DNA from: Octopus bimaculoides
Lineage: Eukaryota
Reading direction: 5' to 3'
DNA length: 45,666 nucleotides
NCBI RefSeq assembly: GCF_001194135.2
Contig: NC_068996.1
Location: 19,620,664-19,666,329 of the forward strand
How positions within the stretch are numbered: the stretch's first letter is position 1; every line of letters begins with the position of its first letter. The position numbers and the translations under genes are program-made. Shown here in pieces: positions 27,324 through 41,983 of this stretch. Below the pieces are notes generated by a model. The model ran no database searches. It was not told where the DNA came from and was given only the letters and a program-made list of their open reading frames with translations.

Positions 27324-27539
27324 TGCAAGATATATATATTTCTTGTATGTATATATATATACATATATATAAATATACATATATATATATATATGTGAGT
27401 GTGTGTGTGTGTGTGTGTGTGTATACATATATATACATACATATGCATACATATATATGCATACATACACATACATGCATATATGTACGTACATATACAT
27501 GCATATATATACATACATATACATACATATATATGTATA

Positions 27540-28568
27540 CATGACAAGGTATAAATAATGGTTAGTACATTTTTTTTGTTATAAATTTGACTTACATCTG
27601 TTTCCAGTAATTACAATAGGTTCGTTATAGATAGCCTTACTTAATCGATTGAGAAAAATTGAATGACCTAGTTTCGTAAGAATCATTGGTTCCTTTATCC
27701 ATTTTTGGATACAGAAAGGCAATTTTAGCAACTTTTCAGAAGTGTGTCACATCATTACAGCTTCTCCAACATAAACTACTAAGAATATCTAATGGGCTTT
27801 GTTTGACCATTATTCTGTATTTCCGTTAGTTACTGGTTCCATTTTATATTTAAATACCAAAGTATTTTATCCAATTCACTGACAATGTGTATGCCTATCT
27901 CTTTAATTTTATAGTTTTCTTATCGTTCCCCTATAGTGATTATTCTCAATTTATTNNNNNNNNNNNNNNNNNNNNNNNNNNNNNNNNNNNNNNNNNNNNN
28001 NNNNNNNNNNNNNNNNNNNNNNNNNNNNNNNNNNNNNNNNNNNNNNNNNNNNNNNNNNNNNNNNNNNNNNNNNNNNNNNNNNNNNNNNNNNNNNNNNNNN
28101 NNNNNNNNNNNNNNNNNNNNNNNNNNNNNNNNNNNNNNNNNNNNNNNNNNNNNNNNNNNNNNNNNNNNNNNNNNNNNNNNNNNNNNNNNNNNNNNNNNNN
28201 NNNNNNNNNNNNNNNNNNNNNNNNNNNNNNNNNNNNNNNNNNNNNNNNNNNNNNNNNNNNNNNNNNNNNNNNNNNNNNNNNNNNNNNNNNNNNNNNNNNN
28301 NNNNNNNNNNNNNNNNNNNNNNNNNNNNNNNNNNNNNNNNNNNNNNNNNNNNNNNNNNNNNNNNNNNNNNNNNNNNNNNNNNNNNNNNNNNNNNNNNNNN
28401 NNNNNNNNNNNNNNNNNNNNNNNNNNNNNNNNNNNNNNNNNNNNNNNNNNNNNNNNNNNNNNNNNNNNNNNNNNNNNNNNNNNNNNNNNNNNNNNNNNNN
28501 NNNNNNNNNNNNNNNNNNNNNNNNNNNNNNNNNNNNNNNNNNNNNNNNNNNNNNNNNNNNNNNNNNNN

Positions 28569-31457: not shown

Positions 31458-31510
31458 GGACACGAGATTTCGGATGATTTCGGATTGAATTAATCCTCAT
31501 CACTGACACT
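31458..31510 (-). ncRNA. Degenerate hammerhead-like motif
   Basis: Minus strand: GTGATGA-GGATT-aattc-AATCC-GAAA-[10-bp tandem duplication]-TCTCGTG-TC. Perfect 5-bp helix II with a G-C closing pair. C3 is G and helix I cannot be recovered. Confidence 0.4.
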
Positions 31511-32937: not shown

Positions 32938-33836
32938 CATTTCTTTTATTAGCCACATAGGGCTCAACGAAGATGGGACAAATACAATGTAGAGCTTTTC
33001 TTTTTGGGAGGGGGAAGGAAGGAAAAANNNNNNNNNNNNNNNNNNNNNNNNNNNNNNNNNNNNNNNNNNNNNNNNNNNNNNNNNNNNNNNNNNNNNNNNN
33101 NNNNNNNNNNNNNNNNNNNNNNNNNNNNNNNNNNNNNNNNNNNNNNNNNNNNNNNNNNNNNNNNNNNNNNNNNNNNNNNNNNNNNNNNNNNNNNNNNNNN
33201 NNNNNNNNNNNNNNNNNNNNNNNNNNNNNNNNNNNNNNNNNNNNNNNNNNNNNNNNNNNNNNNNNNNNNNNNNNNNNNNNNNNNNNNNNNNNNNNNNNNN
33301 NNNNNNNNNNNNNNNNNNNNNNNNNNNNNNNNNNNNNNNNNNNNNNNNNNNNNNNNNNNNNNNNNNNNNNNNNNNNNNNNNNNNNNNNNNNNNNNNNNNN
33401 NNNNNNNNNNNNNNNNNNNNNNNNNNNNNNNNNNNNNNNNNNNNNNNNNNNNNNNNNNNNNNNNNNNNNNNNNNNNNNNNNNNNNNNNNNNNNNNNNNNN
33501 NNNNNNNNNNNNNNNNNNNNNNNNNNNNNNNNNNNNNNNNNNNNNNNNNNNNNNNNNNNNNNNNNNNNNNNNNNNNNNNNNNNNNNNNNNNNNNNNNNNN
33601 NNNNNNNNNNNNNNNNNCGATAGACTCGGCTGATAGACCGACTCGTCCCACACGCGATAGCAGTTGTTCGACGTAAGCCCACAGCTCGGAAATGGTGGGA
33701 CACTGTACGAGTGCGTGCAGAACGGTTTCGTCGCTCTGCCGGCATCTCGGACAGGTCGGCCCCGTGTTTCTCGAGCCATGCCTGTAGAGCTTATCCCGAA
33801 CGGGTAGTGCTTCTCGATAGCACTGCCAGGCCAGGG
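32937..33836 (-). mobile_element. 5'-truncated L1/Tx1 retrotransposon within a (GATA)n tract
   Basis: [20 protein letters not shown]...CPRCRQSDETVLHALVQC (CCHC zinc finger). The 3' UTR has AATAAA. (ATCT)n lies directly on both sides. Confidence 0.88.
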
Positions 33837-34273: not shown

Positions 34274-34393
<120 letters not shown>

Positions 34394-34870
34394 CATACAC
34401 GCACATATCTGTATATAAATGTATATCACCAGTGAACTAAACCCCTCATATTCTATATATTATCGTTAGAGGAGACAACAAACATTAAGACAAGGCAAAC
34501 ATCTCAAGTCATATACAATATTATTACTGGGAAAAAATTCAGTCTTACAGCTGTTTCTGGGATATCCATGAGTTTGGGATATCAGAGACAAATGGGGGGA
34601 AAATAGAGAAAATGAGAATGTTATATATTAATGAGATGACGACATAGAGGAAGTGAGTAAAAGGATAAGGAGATGGAAAGAAAGAAGTAAAAAGAAGCAT
34701 AAATGTTTGTTGCCCTTTTTAATACTTATATATCCGCTGCGTCAGAAATCTGCAATGGCTCCATAACTACCGTCTCGTCTATAACCTTGGGGCCCTACAG
34801 CATTTACCTAGCGTGCCTAATCGTTTAGATCACTTGTGAACTAAACCCCCATAATTTGTGGCTGTGTAAT

Positions 34871-35760: not shown

Positions 35761-36245
35761 TGGACCGATTTTAAGCCAATTAGATAAATTTGTTCAAACT
35801 GGATCCCGCGTCAAGAGAGGGCCCAACACACATGCTCGAGCGGAGGACGCGATGATGAATTTTTAGTATATCATTGTGGGCTAACGATGAAGCCTGAAAC
35901 CTACAACGATTTTTGGCTGCGACTGGCGTACTACACGTCAATCTTCAGCTTTTTTAGAGTAGAGGTCCCCATAGACAATTCCCTAATAGGGCCCCACAAT
36001 TCTTCGCGCCGGATCTGTTGGTGGTAATAGTTTCTTTTTGTGATAGCGCTAGTGGTTTTAGACAGGACATGTTTTATGCCAATTGGACAGATTTATTCAA
36101 ATTGGGTTGTGCGTCAAGAGAGGACCCCGAGAACACACTCGAGTGGAGGACGCTATGATGAATTTTTAGAATATCAGGCCCTGAACGCTTTTCGGTTGGG
36201 ACTAATGTACTACACGAAGCATAAAACTTCAATCTTCAGTTTTTG
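35761..36245. repeat. Diverged tandem duplication with 303 bp period
   Basis: gccaatt.ga.a.attt.ttcaaa...gcgtcaagagagg...ctcgag.ggaggacgc.atgatgaatttttag.atatca...tactacacg...tcaatcttcag.tttttt occurs twice (GCGTC at 35808 and 36111). Confidence 0.85.
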
Positions 36246-36250
36246 TAAAC

Positions 36251-36415
36251 AGAGGCAGCATTAATACAGAAGGGAATATTCAACCCCACTTAAACGTAGA
36301 TGTTCTATTAGAACAAACTATACAGCGGTAGTTACCATGAGAGAAATGCTCATATTGCTTTTTTTTTTAGTAAAACAAAGCTTTCTTGTTATATCACCAG
36401 TGGGAAGATAAATCC
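36251..36415 (-). mobile_element. Partial inverted copy of the retrozyme-like unit, without the hammerhead part
   Basis: The reverse complement ggatttatcttcccactggtgatataacaag...tttctctcatggtaactaccgctgtatagtttgttctaatagaacatctacgtttaagtgggg aligns to copies A, B and C. Confidence 0.8.
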
Positions 36416-36416
36416 C

Positions 36417-36800
36417 TAATAGAACATCGACGTTTAAGTGGGACTAAATATTACCTCTCGGTATTAACACTGCCTATGTCACTAATATATGTGTTTGTTA
36501 ACGAATTAACTGCCTGATTGTGACACCAGCGCCTGTTCTGGCACTCTCAATCTATATATTGCTGGCGATGAGGTGAATCGCTGTTGTCTCTAGCGGCCGA
36601 GCGTCCATCACCAACGAGACCAAAGAAGGTTGAAATCATGTGATCTGGTGGTCTCGCTAGCAATATAAACAAGAGTGCATTTTGCACCAAAAAGACAATA
36701 TAAGAGTTTCTCTCATCGTATCTACCGCAGTATAATTTGTTCTAACAGAACATCCCATGTTTAAGTGCGGATACATATTACCTCCCGATATCACTACTGC
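36417..36800 (+). mobile_element. Retrozyme-like repeat, copy B (~1.15 units, period 327 bp; hammerhead motif at 36605-36651)
   Basis: agaacatc...gtttaagtg..tattacctc recurs at 36421 and 36748. The hammerhead region reads CCATCA-CCAACGA-GACC-AAAGAA-GGTT-GAAA-TCATGTGA-TC-TGGTGG. Confidence 0.8.
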
Positions 36801-37067
36801 CTTTGTTGTTAATATATATTAATCTTACTCTACTTTAACACTCTCGGCTCAATCAATGATAGGTTCATGTAATTCCTGGCCTGATATTACTACTGTAAAG
36901 TTCTGTCTCATTGAGACGCACTGTACGGAAGTTCGAATAGCAGTAGATTCCTTAAGTTAGTATATAACCGTATTATTGTGTATACTGCCCCTGGCTAAGG
37001 AGATTAAATAGAGGAAGAAGTTGAGAAGATTCAGATCGTATTTTCTTTACTTTCCCAAAACAAATCA

Positions 37068-41155: not shown

Positions 41156-41524
41156 AATTTTCCGCCACCTCCAGCGCCGAGACCACCAGGTCACGTTATT
41201 TCGACCTTATTTGTTCTTTTCAGTGATGGATGCTCGACCGCTAGAGACAGCAGCAATTCATCTTACCCCCAACGGTATATAGATTGAGAGCGCCAGAATA
41301 GGTGCTAGTGTCACGATTAGGGAGTTAGCTTGTTAAAAACTATATATTAGTGGCAGAGGCAGTGTAAATACCAAGAGGTAATATTAATCCCCACTTAAAC
41401 GTGAAGTACAAACTATATTGTGGAAGATTACGTGAGAGAAACTCTCATATTGGCTCTTGAGTTTAAAATGGCCCCTTGTTTATATCAGTAGCGGGAGACA
41501 ATTCCCCACTATATCCAGCGCCGA
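41156..41524 (-). mobile_element. Retrozyme-like repeat, copy C (one 344 bp unit plus ~25 bp terminal redundancy; hammerhead motif at 41183-41229)
   Basis: ccagcgccga occurs at 41171 and 41515. The minus strand reads CCATCA-CTGAAAA-GAAC-AAATAA-GGTC-GAAA-TAACGTGA-CC-TGGTGG. Confidence 0.8.
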
Positions 41525-41865
41525 TCAATTGATTTCTACCTTGTTTGGTCTTGTTATTGATGGTCATTCGACCGTGTGTCAATCTTCAGACTCACAATTC
41601 TATTGATAACCGTATATGAGGATCAACGCTGGAATATTGCTATTTTAAACCAACGGTAAAATTACTAAATAAATTTATGCAAAATAAACCCTATCTTAAT
41701 ACAAAACATAAAACTAGGGCACAGCCGAGTTTTCAATGCAAAACAAATAAAAACTGTTGTACATACATAAGGTATACACACATATACACACATACATACA
41801 TACATACATACAAACATACATACATAGCATACATACATACATGCATAGCATACATAAGCGGTATT

Positions 41866-41983
41866 GTCTACGGCCATATCACGCTGAGGCATCGGTTCTC
41901 GTCCGGTCACCGAAGTTAAGCAACGTCGAGCCTAGTGAGTACTTAGATGGGTGACCGCTTGGGAAACCTAGGTGCTGTAAGCA
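41866..41983 (+). rRNA. 5S: Solitary 5S rRNA copy, probably a retropseudogene
   Basis: GTCTACGGCCATATCAC...CTCGTCCGGTCACCGAAGTTAAGC...AGTACTTAGATGGGTGACCGC.TGGGAA...GGTGCTGTAAGC, 118 nt. No oligo-T terminator; an A-rich tract follows. Confidence 0.9.

What the first reader, a model, noticed from the sequence alone, without database searches (positions are those of the whole stretch)
36605..36651. Hidden type I hammerhead ribozyme recovered as the consensus of three decayed copies: a retrozyme-like family
Seen: three homologous segments. A (3601-3645, +) CCATTA TTGACAA G-CC GAAAC GGTT GAAA TCCCGTGC TC TGCTGG. B (36605-36651, +) CCATCA CCAACGA GACC AAAGAA GGTT GAAA TCATGTGA TC TGGTGG. C (41229-41183, -) CCATCA CTGAAAA GAAC AAATAA GGTC GAAA TAACGTGA CC TGGTGG. 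Column-wise they give CCATCA-CTGAC(G)A-GACC-loop-GGT(C/T)-GAAA-TCACGTGA-TC/TGGTGG. That is helix I (CCATCA/TGGTGG, 6 bp with one G-U), the CUGANGA and GAAA core, a 4-bp helix II, a palindromic helix III (ATCACGTGAT) and an AUC cleavage triplet. G8 is present only in copy B; its loss in A fits CpG decay. Established: minimal type I hammerheads with palindromic helix III occur in Penelope-like elements and in animal non-LTR retrozymes, and can cleave as dimers. Inference: this is a cephalopod retrozyme-like family whose three copies here are each inactivated by different mutations. I cannot verify whether it is already described.
Basis: partly seen in the sequence, partly recalled or inferred. 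Interest (0 to 1): 0.92.

Follow-up and report, generated by a model that had tools for sequence, protein, structure and literature searches.

The report
Decayed hammerhead ribozyme in a repeat family
A ~330-bp non-coding repeat present at three places in this window carries the mutated remains of a self-cleaving hammerhead ribozyme of the kind found in animal "retrozyme"/Penelope-type mobile elements. It is a real but dead member of a known class, not a new kind of thing.

Summary
The three segments sit at the stated coordinates and are homologous parts of a ~325-335-bp non-coding repeat. I also found a fourth copy of the motif (D, 41523-41563, minus) and a fifth partial copy without it (E, 36238-36420, minus).

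Copy B is the only place in the window, on either strand, with all three helices in type I order and at most 2 core mismatches. Chance expectation is about 0.0013 per window.

A covariance model built only from four experimentally validated retrozyme hammerheads (coral, mussel, two axolotl) put copy B first (24.4 bits, E=5e-5) and copy C second (18.2 bits, E=0.004).

Majority consensus of four copies restores everything except G8 (1 of 4 copies, at a CpG) and G5 (a 2:2 tie). Every copy is inactivated, and none reaches Rfam thresholds.

The unit size, 40-44% GC, a tandem dimer (D-C, 334 nt) and a head-to-head inverted truncated copy (E/B) fit animal non-LTR retrozymes or non-autonomous Penelope-like elements.

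No outside copies could be retrieved, so the ancestral core, the host species and any activity remain untested.

Verdict: a new member of a known kind, of modest interest.

The parts
3484..3799 (+). Copy A of the repeat: almost one full unit, starting directly after a (TCTG)n microsatellite.
   Evidence: nhmmer profile positions 40-324 plus 1-16, E=1.8e-77; sequence.
3601..3645 (+). Hammerhead relic in copy A: CCATTA TTGACAA G-CC GAAAC GGTT GAAA TCCCGTGC TC TGCTGG. It has U3...A8 in place of C3...G8, a 1-nt deletion in helix II, a broken helix III palindrome and one helix I mismatch. The predicted cleavage site would lie between 3639 and 3640.
   Evidence: The external model R1 gives only 7.8 bits (E=5.2 window-wide, 0.016 locally). 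U3-A8 is a documented natural covariant of C3-G8 (PMC4209133).
36238..36420 (-). Copy E: an inverted, 5'-truncated copy lying head-to-head against copy B. It starts ~25 nt downstream of the ribozyme region, so it has no hammerhead. It ends within ~12 nt of the unit position where B ends.
   Evidence: nhmmer profile positions 221-323 and 1-61, E=4.7e-24 and 2e-11; alignments.
36416..36820 (+). Copy B: 1.2 units in partial tandem (profile 1-324, then 2-64).
   Evidence: nhmmer E=3.2e-108 and 1e-13; sequence.
36605..36651 (+). Hammerhead relic in copy B (the finding's coordinates): CCATCA CCAACGA GACC AAAGAA GGTT GAAA TCATGTGA TC TGGTGG. All three helices are intact, and the core is broken only at U4->C and G5->A. 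The predicted cleavage site lies between 36645 and 36646. A distal extension of helix I (CGAG 36598-36601 with CTCG 36653-36656) follows a small internal loop.
   Evidence: Only descriptor hit in the window (chance 0.0013 per window). Top hit of external model R1 at 24.4 bits, E=5e-5. RNAalifold recovers helix I plus the distal stem.
41405..41575 (-). Copy D: a 5'-truncated unit in tandem upstream of C. It starts ~12 nt before the ribozyme region.
   Evidence: nhmmer profile positions 162-312, E=3.1e-40; sequence.
41523..41563 (-). Hammerhead relic in copy D: CCATCA ATAACAA GACC AAACAA GGTA GAAA TCAATTGA TC, followed by a 10-nt deletion of the helix I 3' strand. The helix III palindrome is retained as ATCAATTGAT (centre CG->AT).
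   Evidence: R1 gives only 2.7 bits.
41172..41402 (-). Copy C: the unit in tandem downstream of D. Weaker similarity may continue to ~41050, where a (TAG)n/(TAC)n microsatellite begins.
   Evidence: nhmmer profile positions 1-231, E=2.5e-74; MAFFT continuation; sequence.
41183..41229 (-). Hammerhead relic in copy C: CCATCA CTGAAAA GAAC AAATAA GGTC GAAA TAACGTGA CC TGGTGG. It carries G8->A, U16.1->C and one mismatch each in helices II and III. The predicted cleavage site lies between 41189 and 41188, which is 334 nt from D's site.
   Evidence: Second-best hit of external model R1 in the window at 18.2 bits, E=0.0038.

Best explanation
These are neutral, mutated insertions of an old non-coding retroelement family with a unit of ~325-335 bp and 40-44% GC. 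Its source element carried a canonical metazoan type I hammerhead ribozyme, which places it with the animal non-LTR retrozymes and non-autonomous Penelope-like-element derivatives.

The inferred mechanism for the once-active element is as follows. It was transcribed across at least two tandem units. Helix III is too weak to form within one molecule (3 bp plus an ACGU loop). The palindrome AUCACGUGAU of two ribozyme copies therefore pairs between molecules to form a dimeric hammerhead. Each ribozyme cuts after C17 of the A-U-C triplet and releases ~334-nt monomers. Those monomers could be circularised by a host RNA ligase. A Penelope-type reverse transcriptase/GIY-YIG nuclease supplied in trans would copy and insert them, leaving 5'-truncated, partly tandem and inverted copies.

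Shown here: the homology of the copies; the motif and its statistical and model-based similarity to validated retrozyme hammerheads; the tandem and inverted arrangement; and the inactivating mutations.

Inferred only: ancestral G5 and G8, catalytic activity, dimer action, circular RNA, and the Penelope-like machinery.
For: (1) Five homologous copies lie at three loci.

(2) Copy B keeps helix I at 6/6, helix II at 4/4, helix III, GAAA and UC, with only 2 core changes. It is the only such site in the window, against 0.0013 expected by chance.

(3) Model R1 was built from four validated retrozyme hammerheads from other phyla (Suppl. Table 2 of PMC7229834). It ranks B first (24.4 bits, E=5e-5) and C second (18.2 bits, E=0.0038) across 45.7 kb on both strands with filters off. 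The best unrelated hit scores 13.7 bits.

(4) Majority consensus of four copies gives CCATCA-CT(G/A)ACAA-GACC-AAANAA-GGTT-GAAA-TCACGTGA-TC-TGGTGG. The other copies restore both of B's core defects: T at position 4 in 3 of 3, and G at position 5 in 2 of 3.

(5) In the named structure 82% of cells pair in register, against 22-42% when the partners are slid. RNAalifold independently finds helix I and a distal stem.

(6) The architecture equals the published canonical metazoan type I hammerhead: helix I 6 bp, helix II 4 bp, and a short helix III with a palindromic loop (PMC4209133). Unit size, low GC and tandem repeats match non-LTR retrozymes (PMC7229834; GC).

(7) The intramolecular helix III hairpin is not stable (0 kcal/mol), whereas the intermolecular 10-bp palindrome gives -14.3 kcal/mol. 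This parallels the dimer-dependent amphibian ribozymes.

(8) The partial tandems and the head-to-head inverted 5'-truncated copy E/B match the insertion structures described for Penelope-like elements (PMC8557442).

(9) Hammerhead_1 loci and Penelope-like elements are reported in cephalopod genomes, if that is the host (PMC6962438; PMC13282606).
Against: No single copy has an intact core.

No Rfam hammerhead family matches at gathering score or at E<=10. That cut-off is multiplied over 4227 families, so it is strict.

G8 is a minority state (1 of 4) and G5 is a tie, so an ancestral catalytic core is not proven.

There is no informative covariation, because the copies decay neutrally.

The hammerhead fold is not the minimum-energy fold of the reconstructed 64-mer (-17.6 against -21.8 kcal/mol).

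The 334-nt monomer is not unusually structured (z=-0.54).

The unit shows no sequence homology to the mussel or coral retrozymes outside the motif.

Only four copies of the motif are available, and no genome-wide consensus could be built.
Confidence: 0.78

Rival explanations
1. The resemblance is chance or convergence. On this reading the repeat is an ordinary SINE or dispersed mini-satellite, perhaps tRNA-derived with GGTTGAAATCC as a degenerate B box, and it never carried a ribozyme.
For: In copy A, GGTTGAAATCC differs from the pol III B box / T-arm consensus GGTTCAAATCC by one base (consensus from established knowledge). No Rfam hammerhead hit was found. G8 is in the minority and G5 is tied.
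Against: ARAGORN finds no tRNA. Rfam reports no tRNA or other family at E<=10 over a full unit. No T-stem or cloverleaf pairing can be drawn in the consensus. A single copy (B) already matches a strict descriptor with 0.0013 expected per window. A model trained on unrelated validated hammerheads ranks B and C first and second in the window. A B box would not explain helix I, the CUGA box or the palindromic helix III.
Confidence: 0.1
2. The hammerhead is real, but the unit is not an independent retrozyme. On this reading it is the pseudo-LTR of an autonomous Penelope-like element, present here only as solo or tandem terminal-repeat fragments.
For: Penelope-like elements carry hammerheads in their terminal repeats. 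They insert as partial tandems with inverted 5'-truncated copies and favour microsatellites (PMC4209133; PMC8557442). That pattern is seen at E/B and D/C, and at the microsatellites next to A and C. [quoted passage not shown]
Against: Two hammerhead relics (D and C) are separated by only 334 nt with no ORF. In an autonomous element the repeats flank a ~3-kb RT-EN ORF. No reverse-transcriptase sequence adjoins any copy. The motif is the canonical type, with a 4-bp helix II and a 6-nt loop, rather than the minimal hammerhead typical of metazoan Penelope-like elements (PMC4209133). This differs from the best explanation mainly in naming.
Confidence: 0.2
3. At least one copy here, or the family in this genome, is still functional and is not merely a fossil.
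For: Copy A has U3-A8, a natural functional covariant of C3-G8 (PMC4209133). Copy D keeps a perfect helix III palindrome through a double CG->AT change.
Against: A has a deletion in helix II and two mismatches in helix III. B lacks U4 and G5. C lacks G8 and the 15.1-16.1 pair. D lacks the helix I 3' strand. The motif diverges from the reconstructed consensus (about 9% in B, about 13% in C; hand counts) no less than expected from the whole-unit pairwise K2P of 0.24-0.43. That indicates no purifying selection.
Confidence: 0.03

Closest known systems
Metazoan non-LTR retrozymes with canonical type I hammerheads (coral Amil224, mussel Mg353, axolotl Ax330/Ax353; Cervera & de la Pena 2020, PMC7229834)
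   Same: Both are non-coding units of a few hundred bp (here ~334; theirs 224-353) with low GC and a tandem arrangement. The ribozyme layout is the same: a 6-bp helix I ending ...CA before CUGA, a 4-bp helix II with a 5-6-nt loop, GAAA, a palindromic helix III (CACGUG core, as in Ax353), then UC and the cut before UGG... A covariance model built from those four sequences finds copies B and C as the top hits.
   Different: Here all copies are mutated. Arrays are only 1.2-1.6 units long rather than long multimers. There is no sequence homology outside the motif. Expression and circular RNA are unknown. The host is possibly a cephalopod, and I found no paper in the held library that mentions retrozymes together with octopus, squid or cuttlefish (two searches found only passing mentions).
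Penelope-like elements and their hammerhead-bearing pseudo-LTRs (Cervera & de la Pena 2014, PMC4209133; Craig et al. 2021, PMC8557442)
   Same: Both show partial tandem insertions, an inverted 5'-truncated copy head-to-head, microsatellite neighbourhoods, a hammerhead in the repeated unit, and the U3-A8 core covariant (seen here in copy A).
   Different: No RT/GIY-YIG ORF lies between or next to the copies. The motif is the canonical type rather than the minimal hammerhead.
Newt/salamander satellite 2 and Schistosoma Sm-alpha SINE-like repeats (~330 bp, type I hammerhead; named from my own knowledge and as cited within PMC7229834 and PMC4209133)
   Same: Both have a ~330-bp unit and a type I hammerhead with a weak palindromic helix III that is expected to work only as a dimer in multimeric transcripts.
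   Different: Those families have many intact, experimentally active copies. Here only fossils are seen.
Rfam RF00163 Hammerhead_1
   Same: The same topology and core order.
   Different: No copy reaches the gathering score or even E<=10.

Membership tests
Hammerhead ribozyme, type I | Conserved catalytic core: C3 U4 G5 A6 N7 G8 A9, G12 A13 A14, the A15.1-U16.1 pair, and H17 | tested here: inconclusive
   No extant copy has it complete. B has U4C and G5A. C has G8A and U16.1C. A has U3/A8 (a known covariant) plus damaged helices. D has three changes. The majority consensus has every position except G8 (1 of 4 copies, at a CpG) and G5 (2:2).
Hammerhead ribozyme, type I | Three helices around the core, with helix I open (order: I-5', core, II, GAAA, III, UH, I-3') | tested here: met
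   Copy B has helix I at 6/6, helix II at 4/4 and helix III at 3 bp plus a loop. Across four copies 82% of cells pair in register, against 22-42% when slid.
Hammerhead ribozyme, type I | Scores as a hammerhead with a covariance model | tested here: inconclusive
   Rfam gives no hit at gathering score or at E<=10. The independent model R1, built from four validated retrozyme hammerheads, gives B 24.4 bits (E=5e-5) and C 18.2 bits (E=0.0038) as the top two hits of the window. A and D are not significant.
Hammerhead ribozyme, type I | Self-cleavage after H17 | not testable with these tools
   This needs in vitro transcription of consensus monomer and dimer constructs.
Metazoan non-LTR retrozyme | Non-coding unit of ~150-450 bp with low GC (<45-50%) | tested here: met
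   The unit is 325-334 bp with GC 0.40-0.44. No ORF of 50 aa or more lies within a unit. The criteria come from PMC7229834.
Metazoan non-LTR retrozyme | Tandem repeats (dimers to multimers), each monomer carrying a type I hammerhead | tested here: inconclusive
   One dimer-like array (D-C) has two relics 334 nt apart. B spans 1.2 units with one relic, and A is a single unit. No long arrays lie in this window.
Metazoan non-LTR retrozyme | [quoted passage not shown] | not testable with these tools
   No transcriptome data are available. The host genome could not be reached.
Penelope-like element (autonomous) | RT plus GIY-YIG endonuclease ORF between the terminal repeats | tested here: not met
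   No ORF lies between D and C or next to any copy. The only GIY-YIG-like ORF in the window is 19 kb away at 16544-17113(-) and has no RT beside it.
Penelope-like element (insertion signature) | Partial tandem copies, with an inverted 5'-truncated copy adjacent | tested here: met
   E(-) at 36238-36420 abuts B(+) at 36416-36820 head-to-head. B and D/C are partial tandems. The description comes from PMC8557442.
tRNA-derived SINE | A tRNA-like cloverleaf or A and B boxes at the 5' end | tested here: not met
   ARAGORN finds none. Rfam shows no tRNA at E<=10 over a complete unit. Only a B-box-like GGTTGAAATCC is present, and only in copy A.

The most novel reading that the evidence does not exclude
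This may be a sample of an abundant, so far undescribed retrozyme family of the host genome. The family covers about 3% of this window (~1.4 of 45.7 kb; my sum of the copy lengths). On this reading, part of what is annotated as unclassified SINE or repeat in that genome would really be hammerhead-bearing elements mobilised by Penelope-like machinery. Younger intact copies elsewhere would still self-cleave as dimers and produce ~334-nt circular RNAs.
Probability: 0.15. Interest if true: 0.55.

Novelty: new member of a known kind. Interest (0 to 1): 0.33.

Why it matters
If confirmed genome-wide, this would add a further animal lineage to the hosts of hammerhead retrozymes. In the held library I found only a bare count of Rfam Hammerhead_1 hits for such genomes (PMC6962438). 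It would also give a concrete family in which to look for ribozyme-derived circular RNAs. The case further shows that ribozymes invisible to per-copy Rfam scans can be recovered from the consensus of decayed repeats, so hammerhead counts in repeat-rich genomes are likely underestimates. It does not change what is known about how such elements work.

Tried and rejected
(1) I first thought copy E begins exactly at the predicted cleavage site (CTGGTGA). Alignment showed that this string belongs to a segment ~25-55 nt downstream of the ribozyme, so I rejected the idea.

(2) By eye, the flanks resembled the mussel retrozyme Mg353 (TCGAGCGTC..., CTGGTGG..GATTTAT..CTCC). Local alignment scores lie within the shuffle distribution, so I rejected homology.

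(3) I tested a tRNA-derived SINE or B-box origin. ARAGORN and Rfam were negative and no T-arm pairing exists.

(4) Rfam hammerhead families gave no hit at gathering score or at E<=10. The whole-window E-value scan was swamped by microsatellite-driven microRNA false positives.

(5) Every attempt to find outside copies failed. These were two conserved DNA patterns in the viral, metagenome and prokaryote-genome collections, a pseudo-protein profile of the open antisense frame, and exact look-ups of two window ORFs. Homologues of the GIY-YIG-like and mariner ORFs reached at most 52% and 74% identity respectively, and the closest mariner hits sit on contigs of only 1.3-1.7 kb. For the same reason the host species could not be verified.

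(6) The covariation test was uninformative for neutrally decaying copies.

(7) The whole-unit RNA shows no structural stability beyond shuffles (z=-0.54), and the reconstructed hammerhead fold is not the minimum-energy fold.

(8) Target-site duplications could not be resolved by eye at these divergences.

Full report
**Observation.** The three quoted segments are in the sequence exactly as written. They are not isolated similarities. Flanks of ~320 nt align at 71% mean column identity. Iterated nhmmer defines a unit of ~325 profile positions, with E-values down to 1e-108.

The window holds five pieces of the family at three loci.
- A lies at 3484-3799 (+). It is nearly one unit and starts right after a (TCTG)n microsatellite.
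- E lies at 36238-36420 (-). It is 5'-truncated and sits head-to-head against B.
- B lies at 36416-36820 (+) and spans 1.2 units.
- D lies at 41405-41575 (-) and is 5'-truncated. It is followed in tandem by C at 41172-41402 (-), which may continue to ~41050 next to a trinucleotide microsatellite.

**Is the hammerhead-like pattern more than chance?** I wrote a type I descriptor that follows the published canonical metazoan architecture: helix I 6 bp, helix II 4 bp, and a short helix III with a small palindromic loop (PMC4209133). It requires exact GAAA, U16.1 and H17, all helix pairs (G-U allowed), and at most 2 mismatches in the six fixed bases of CUGANGA.
- Copy B is the only hit in the window on either strand.
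- In 175 Mb of composition-matched random sequence there were 3 hits, which is 0.0013 expected per window.
- B's two core defects are U4->C and G5->A. The other copies repair both: T at position 4 in A, C and D, and G at position 5 in A and C.

**An independent, non-circular test.** Supplementary Table 2 of Cervera & de la Pena 2020 (PMC7229834) gives four experimentally self-cleaving retrozymes. I extracted their hammerheads:
- coral Amil224: ACTGCA CTGATGA GGCC AGAAA GGCC GAAA CAGTACTG TC TGCAGT
- mussel Mg353: GCGTCA CTGATGA GTCT TTTGT AGAC GAAA CGCGCG TC TGGCGT
- axolotl Ax353 and Ax330

I aligned them and built a calibrated covariance model, R1, from them alone. I then searched the whole window on both strands with filters off.
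- The best hit is copy B at 36605-36651 (24.4 bits, E=5e-5).
- The second is copy C at 41183-41229 (-) (18.2 bits, E=0.0038).
The best unrelated hit scores 13.7 bits.
- Copies A (7.8 bits) and D (2.7 bits) are too damaged to be recognised on their own.

The calibration is shortened, so E-values are rough. The rank order and the coincidence with two homologous positions of one repeat family do not depend on that.

**Consensus and state of each copy.** Majority rule over four copies gives CCATCA / CT(G|A)ACAA / GACC-AAANAA-GGTT / GAAA / TCACGTGA / TC / TGGTGG.
- Everything required is recovered except G8 and G5. G8 is present only in B, and the site is a CpG with C7. G5 is tied 2:2.
- CpG decay is visible elsewhere in the family. 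For example, GCGT becomes GTGT in A and GCAT in C. The window's CpG observed/expected ratio is 0.76.
- A rough estimate with assumed substitution rates (my own arithmetic, no tool call) weighs "ancestral CG decayed three times" and "ancestral CA, one A->G in B" about equally. G8 is therefore plausible but not shown.
- Copy A reads U3...A8. The 2014 Penelope paper reports this as a natural covariant of C3-G8.
- Copy D keeps a perfect helix III palindrome (ATCAATTGAT) through a double change. Both points are suggestive but anecdotal.
- All four copies are inactivated. B lacks U4 and G5. C lacks G8 and the 15.1-16.1 pair. A has a deletion in helix II and a broken helix III. D lacks half of helix I.
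- Whole-unit pairwise K2P is 0.24-0.43. By hand counts, the motif differs from the reconstructed consensus by about 9% in B and about 13% in C. That shows no sign of slower decay, so these are neutral fossils.

**Structure.**
- In the named structure 82% of cells pair in register, against 22-42% when the partners are slid. There is no informative covariation, as expected for decaying copies of one source.
- RNAalifold on A, B and C independently predicts helix I plus a distal stem (CGAG/CUCG and beyond) across a small internal loop. This is the usual place of "loop 1" in type I ribozymes. For the middle of the motif it prefers an alternative hairpin.
- The reconstructed hammerhead fold scores -17.6 kcal/mol against a minimum free energy of -21.8 kcal/mol. 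The intramolecular helix III hairpin has no predicted stability, whereas the intermolecular 10-bp palindrome gives -14.3 kcal/mol. This fits the dimer-dependent behaviour described for amphibian retrozyme ribozymes, but it is inference.
- The 334-nt monomer is not unusually structured (z=-0.54).

**What kind of element?**
- The unit is non-coding: no ORF of 50 aa or more lies within a unit. It has 40-44% GC and is ~330 bp long.
- It occurs once as a dimer-like tandem carrying a ribozyme relic in each unit (D-C). These are the published features of metazoan non-LTR retrozymes (PMC7229834).
- The partial tandems, the head-to-head inverted 5'-truncated copy (E/B) and the microsatellite neighbours match the insertion structures of Penelope-like elements (PMC8557442). 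[quoted passage not shown]
- E and B end within ~12 nt of the same unit position, which is compatible with a defined 3' end and variable 5' truncation.

**Rivals.** For a tRNA-derived SINE, ARAGORN finds no tRNA, Rfam finds nothing at E<=10 over a complete unit, and no T-arm pairing exists. Only copy A has a B-box-like GGTTGAAATCC. Chance is addressed above. Homology to the mussel or coral retrozymes outside the motif was tested and is not significant, so the relationship is one of class, not of family.

**What could not be done.** No copy from outside the window could be retrieved.
- Two conserved DNA patterns found nothing in the viral, metagenome or prokaryote-genome collections.
- A profile of the open antisense frame found nothing.
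- Exact look-ups of two window ORFs failed.
- Homologues of the GIY-YIG-like and mariner ORFs reached at most 52% and 74% identity respectively, and the closest mariner hits sit on contigs of only 1.3-1.7 kb.

The host species is therefore unverified. The genome-wide consensus, which is the decisive test, remains to be built.

**Literature context.** The giant squid genome paper lists 235 Rfam Hammerhead_1 loci without further study. Penelope-like elements expanded in Octopus at a Jukes-Cantor distance of ~0.2. No paper in the held library mentions retrozymes together with octopus, squid or cuttlefish; two searches found only passing mentions.

**Verdict.** The repeat is a decayed, retrozyme-like / Penelope-derived family with a canonical type I hammerhead relic. 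It is a new member of a known kind. All copies here are dead and the mechanism is not new, so interest is modest.

Noticed in passing
window 41866-41983 (+): A full-length 5S rRNA match (89.8 bits, E=4e-18) lies ~290 bp from copy D on the opposite strand. Directly downstream (41984 onward) the sequence is A-rich, with no immediate run of T as a pol III terminator. It could be a gene, a pseudogene or a 5S-derived SINE head; the giant squid paper reports ~24,000 5S-derived loci.
   Followed up: partly
window 16544-17113 (-): A 189-aa ORF carries a CxC...C motif followed by a GIY...YVG-like segment. Its distant homologues (35-52% identity) carry the GIY-YIG nuclease domain PF01541. The ORF itself has no Pfam hit and no reverse transcriptase beside it. 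It is probably the remnant of a mobile-element nuclease, possibly Penelope/Naiad-like.
   Followed up: partly
window 6872-7336 (-): A mariner/Mos1-type transposase C-terminal fragment (PF01359, E=2.5e-18). Its closest database relatives are only 72-74% identical.
   Followed up: partly
window ~33620-33835 (-): The C-terminal zinc-binding domain of a non-LTR reverse transcriptase (zf-RVT, PF13966, E=6e-9). It sits next to an assembly gap and (CTGT/CTAT)-type microsatellites.
   Followed up: no
window 31460-31509 (-): A weak hammerhead-like hit of model R1 (11.5 bits, E=0.39): GTGTCA GTGATGA GGAT TAATTCA ATCC GAAA TCATCCGAAA TC TCGTGT. It has G at position 3, no proper helix III and one helix I mismatch. 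It is not significant and not part of the family studied, but it could be another decayed ribozyme.
   Followed up: partly
whole window, e.g. 18724-18807, 27385-27541, 34341-34411: The window is dense in di-, tri- and tetranucleotide microsatellites and contains 6,513 N in assembly gaps. The microsatellites produce hundreds of sub-threshold Rfam microRNA matches (mir-297, mir-3149, mir-466 and others). These are artefacts of low-complexity hairpins.
   Followed up: no
window 3646-3660 (+) and 41160-41182 (-): Just downstream of the ribozyme the unit repeats a helix-I-like string (CTGGTGGT / CTGGAGGT...GCGG). In copy A the covariance model prefers this second TCTGGTGG (3653-3660) as the helix I 3' strand. 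The significance of this short internal duplication is unknown.
   Followed up: no
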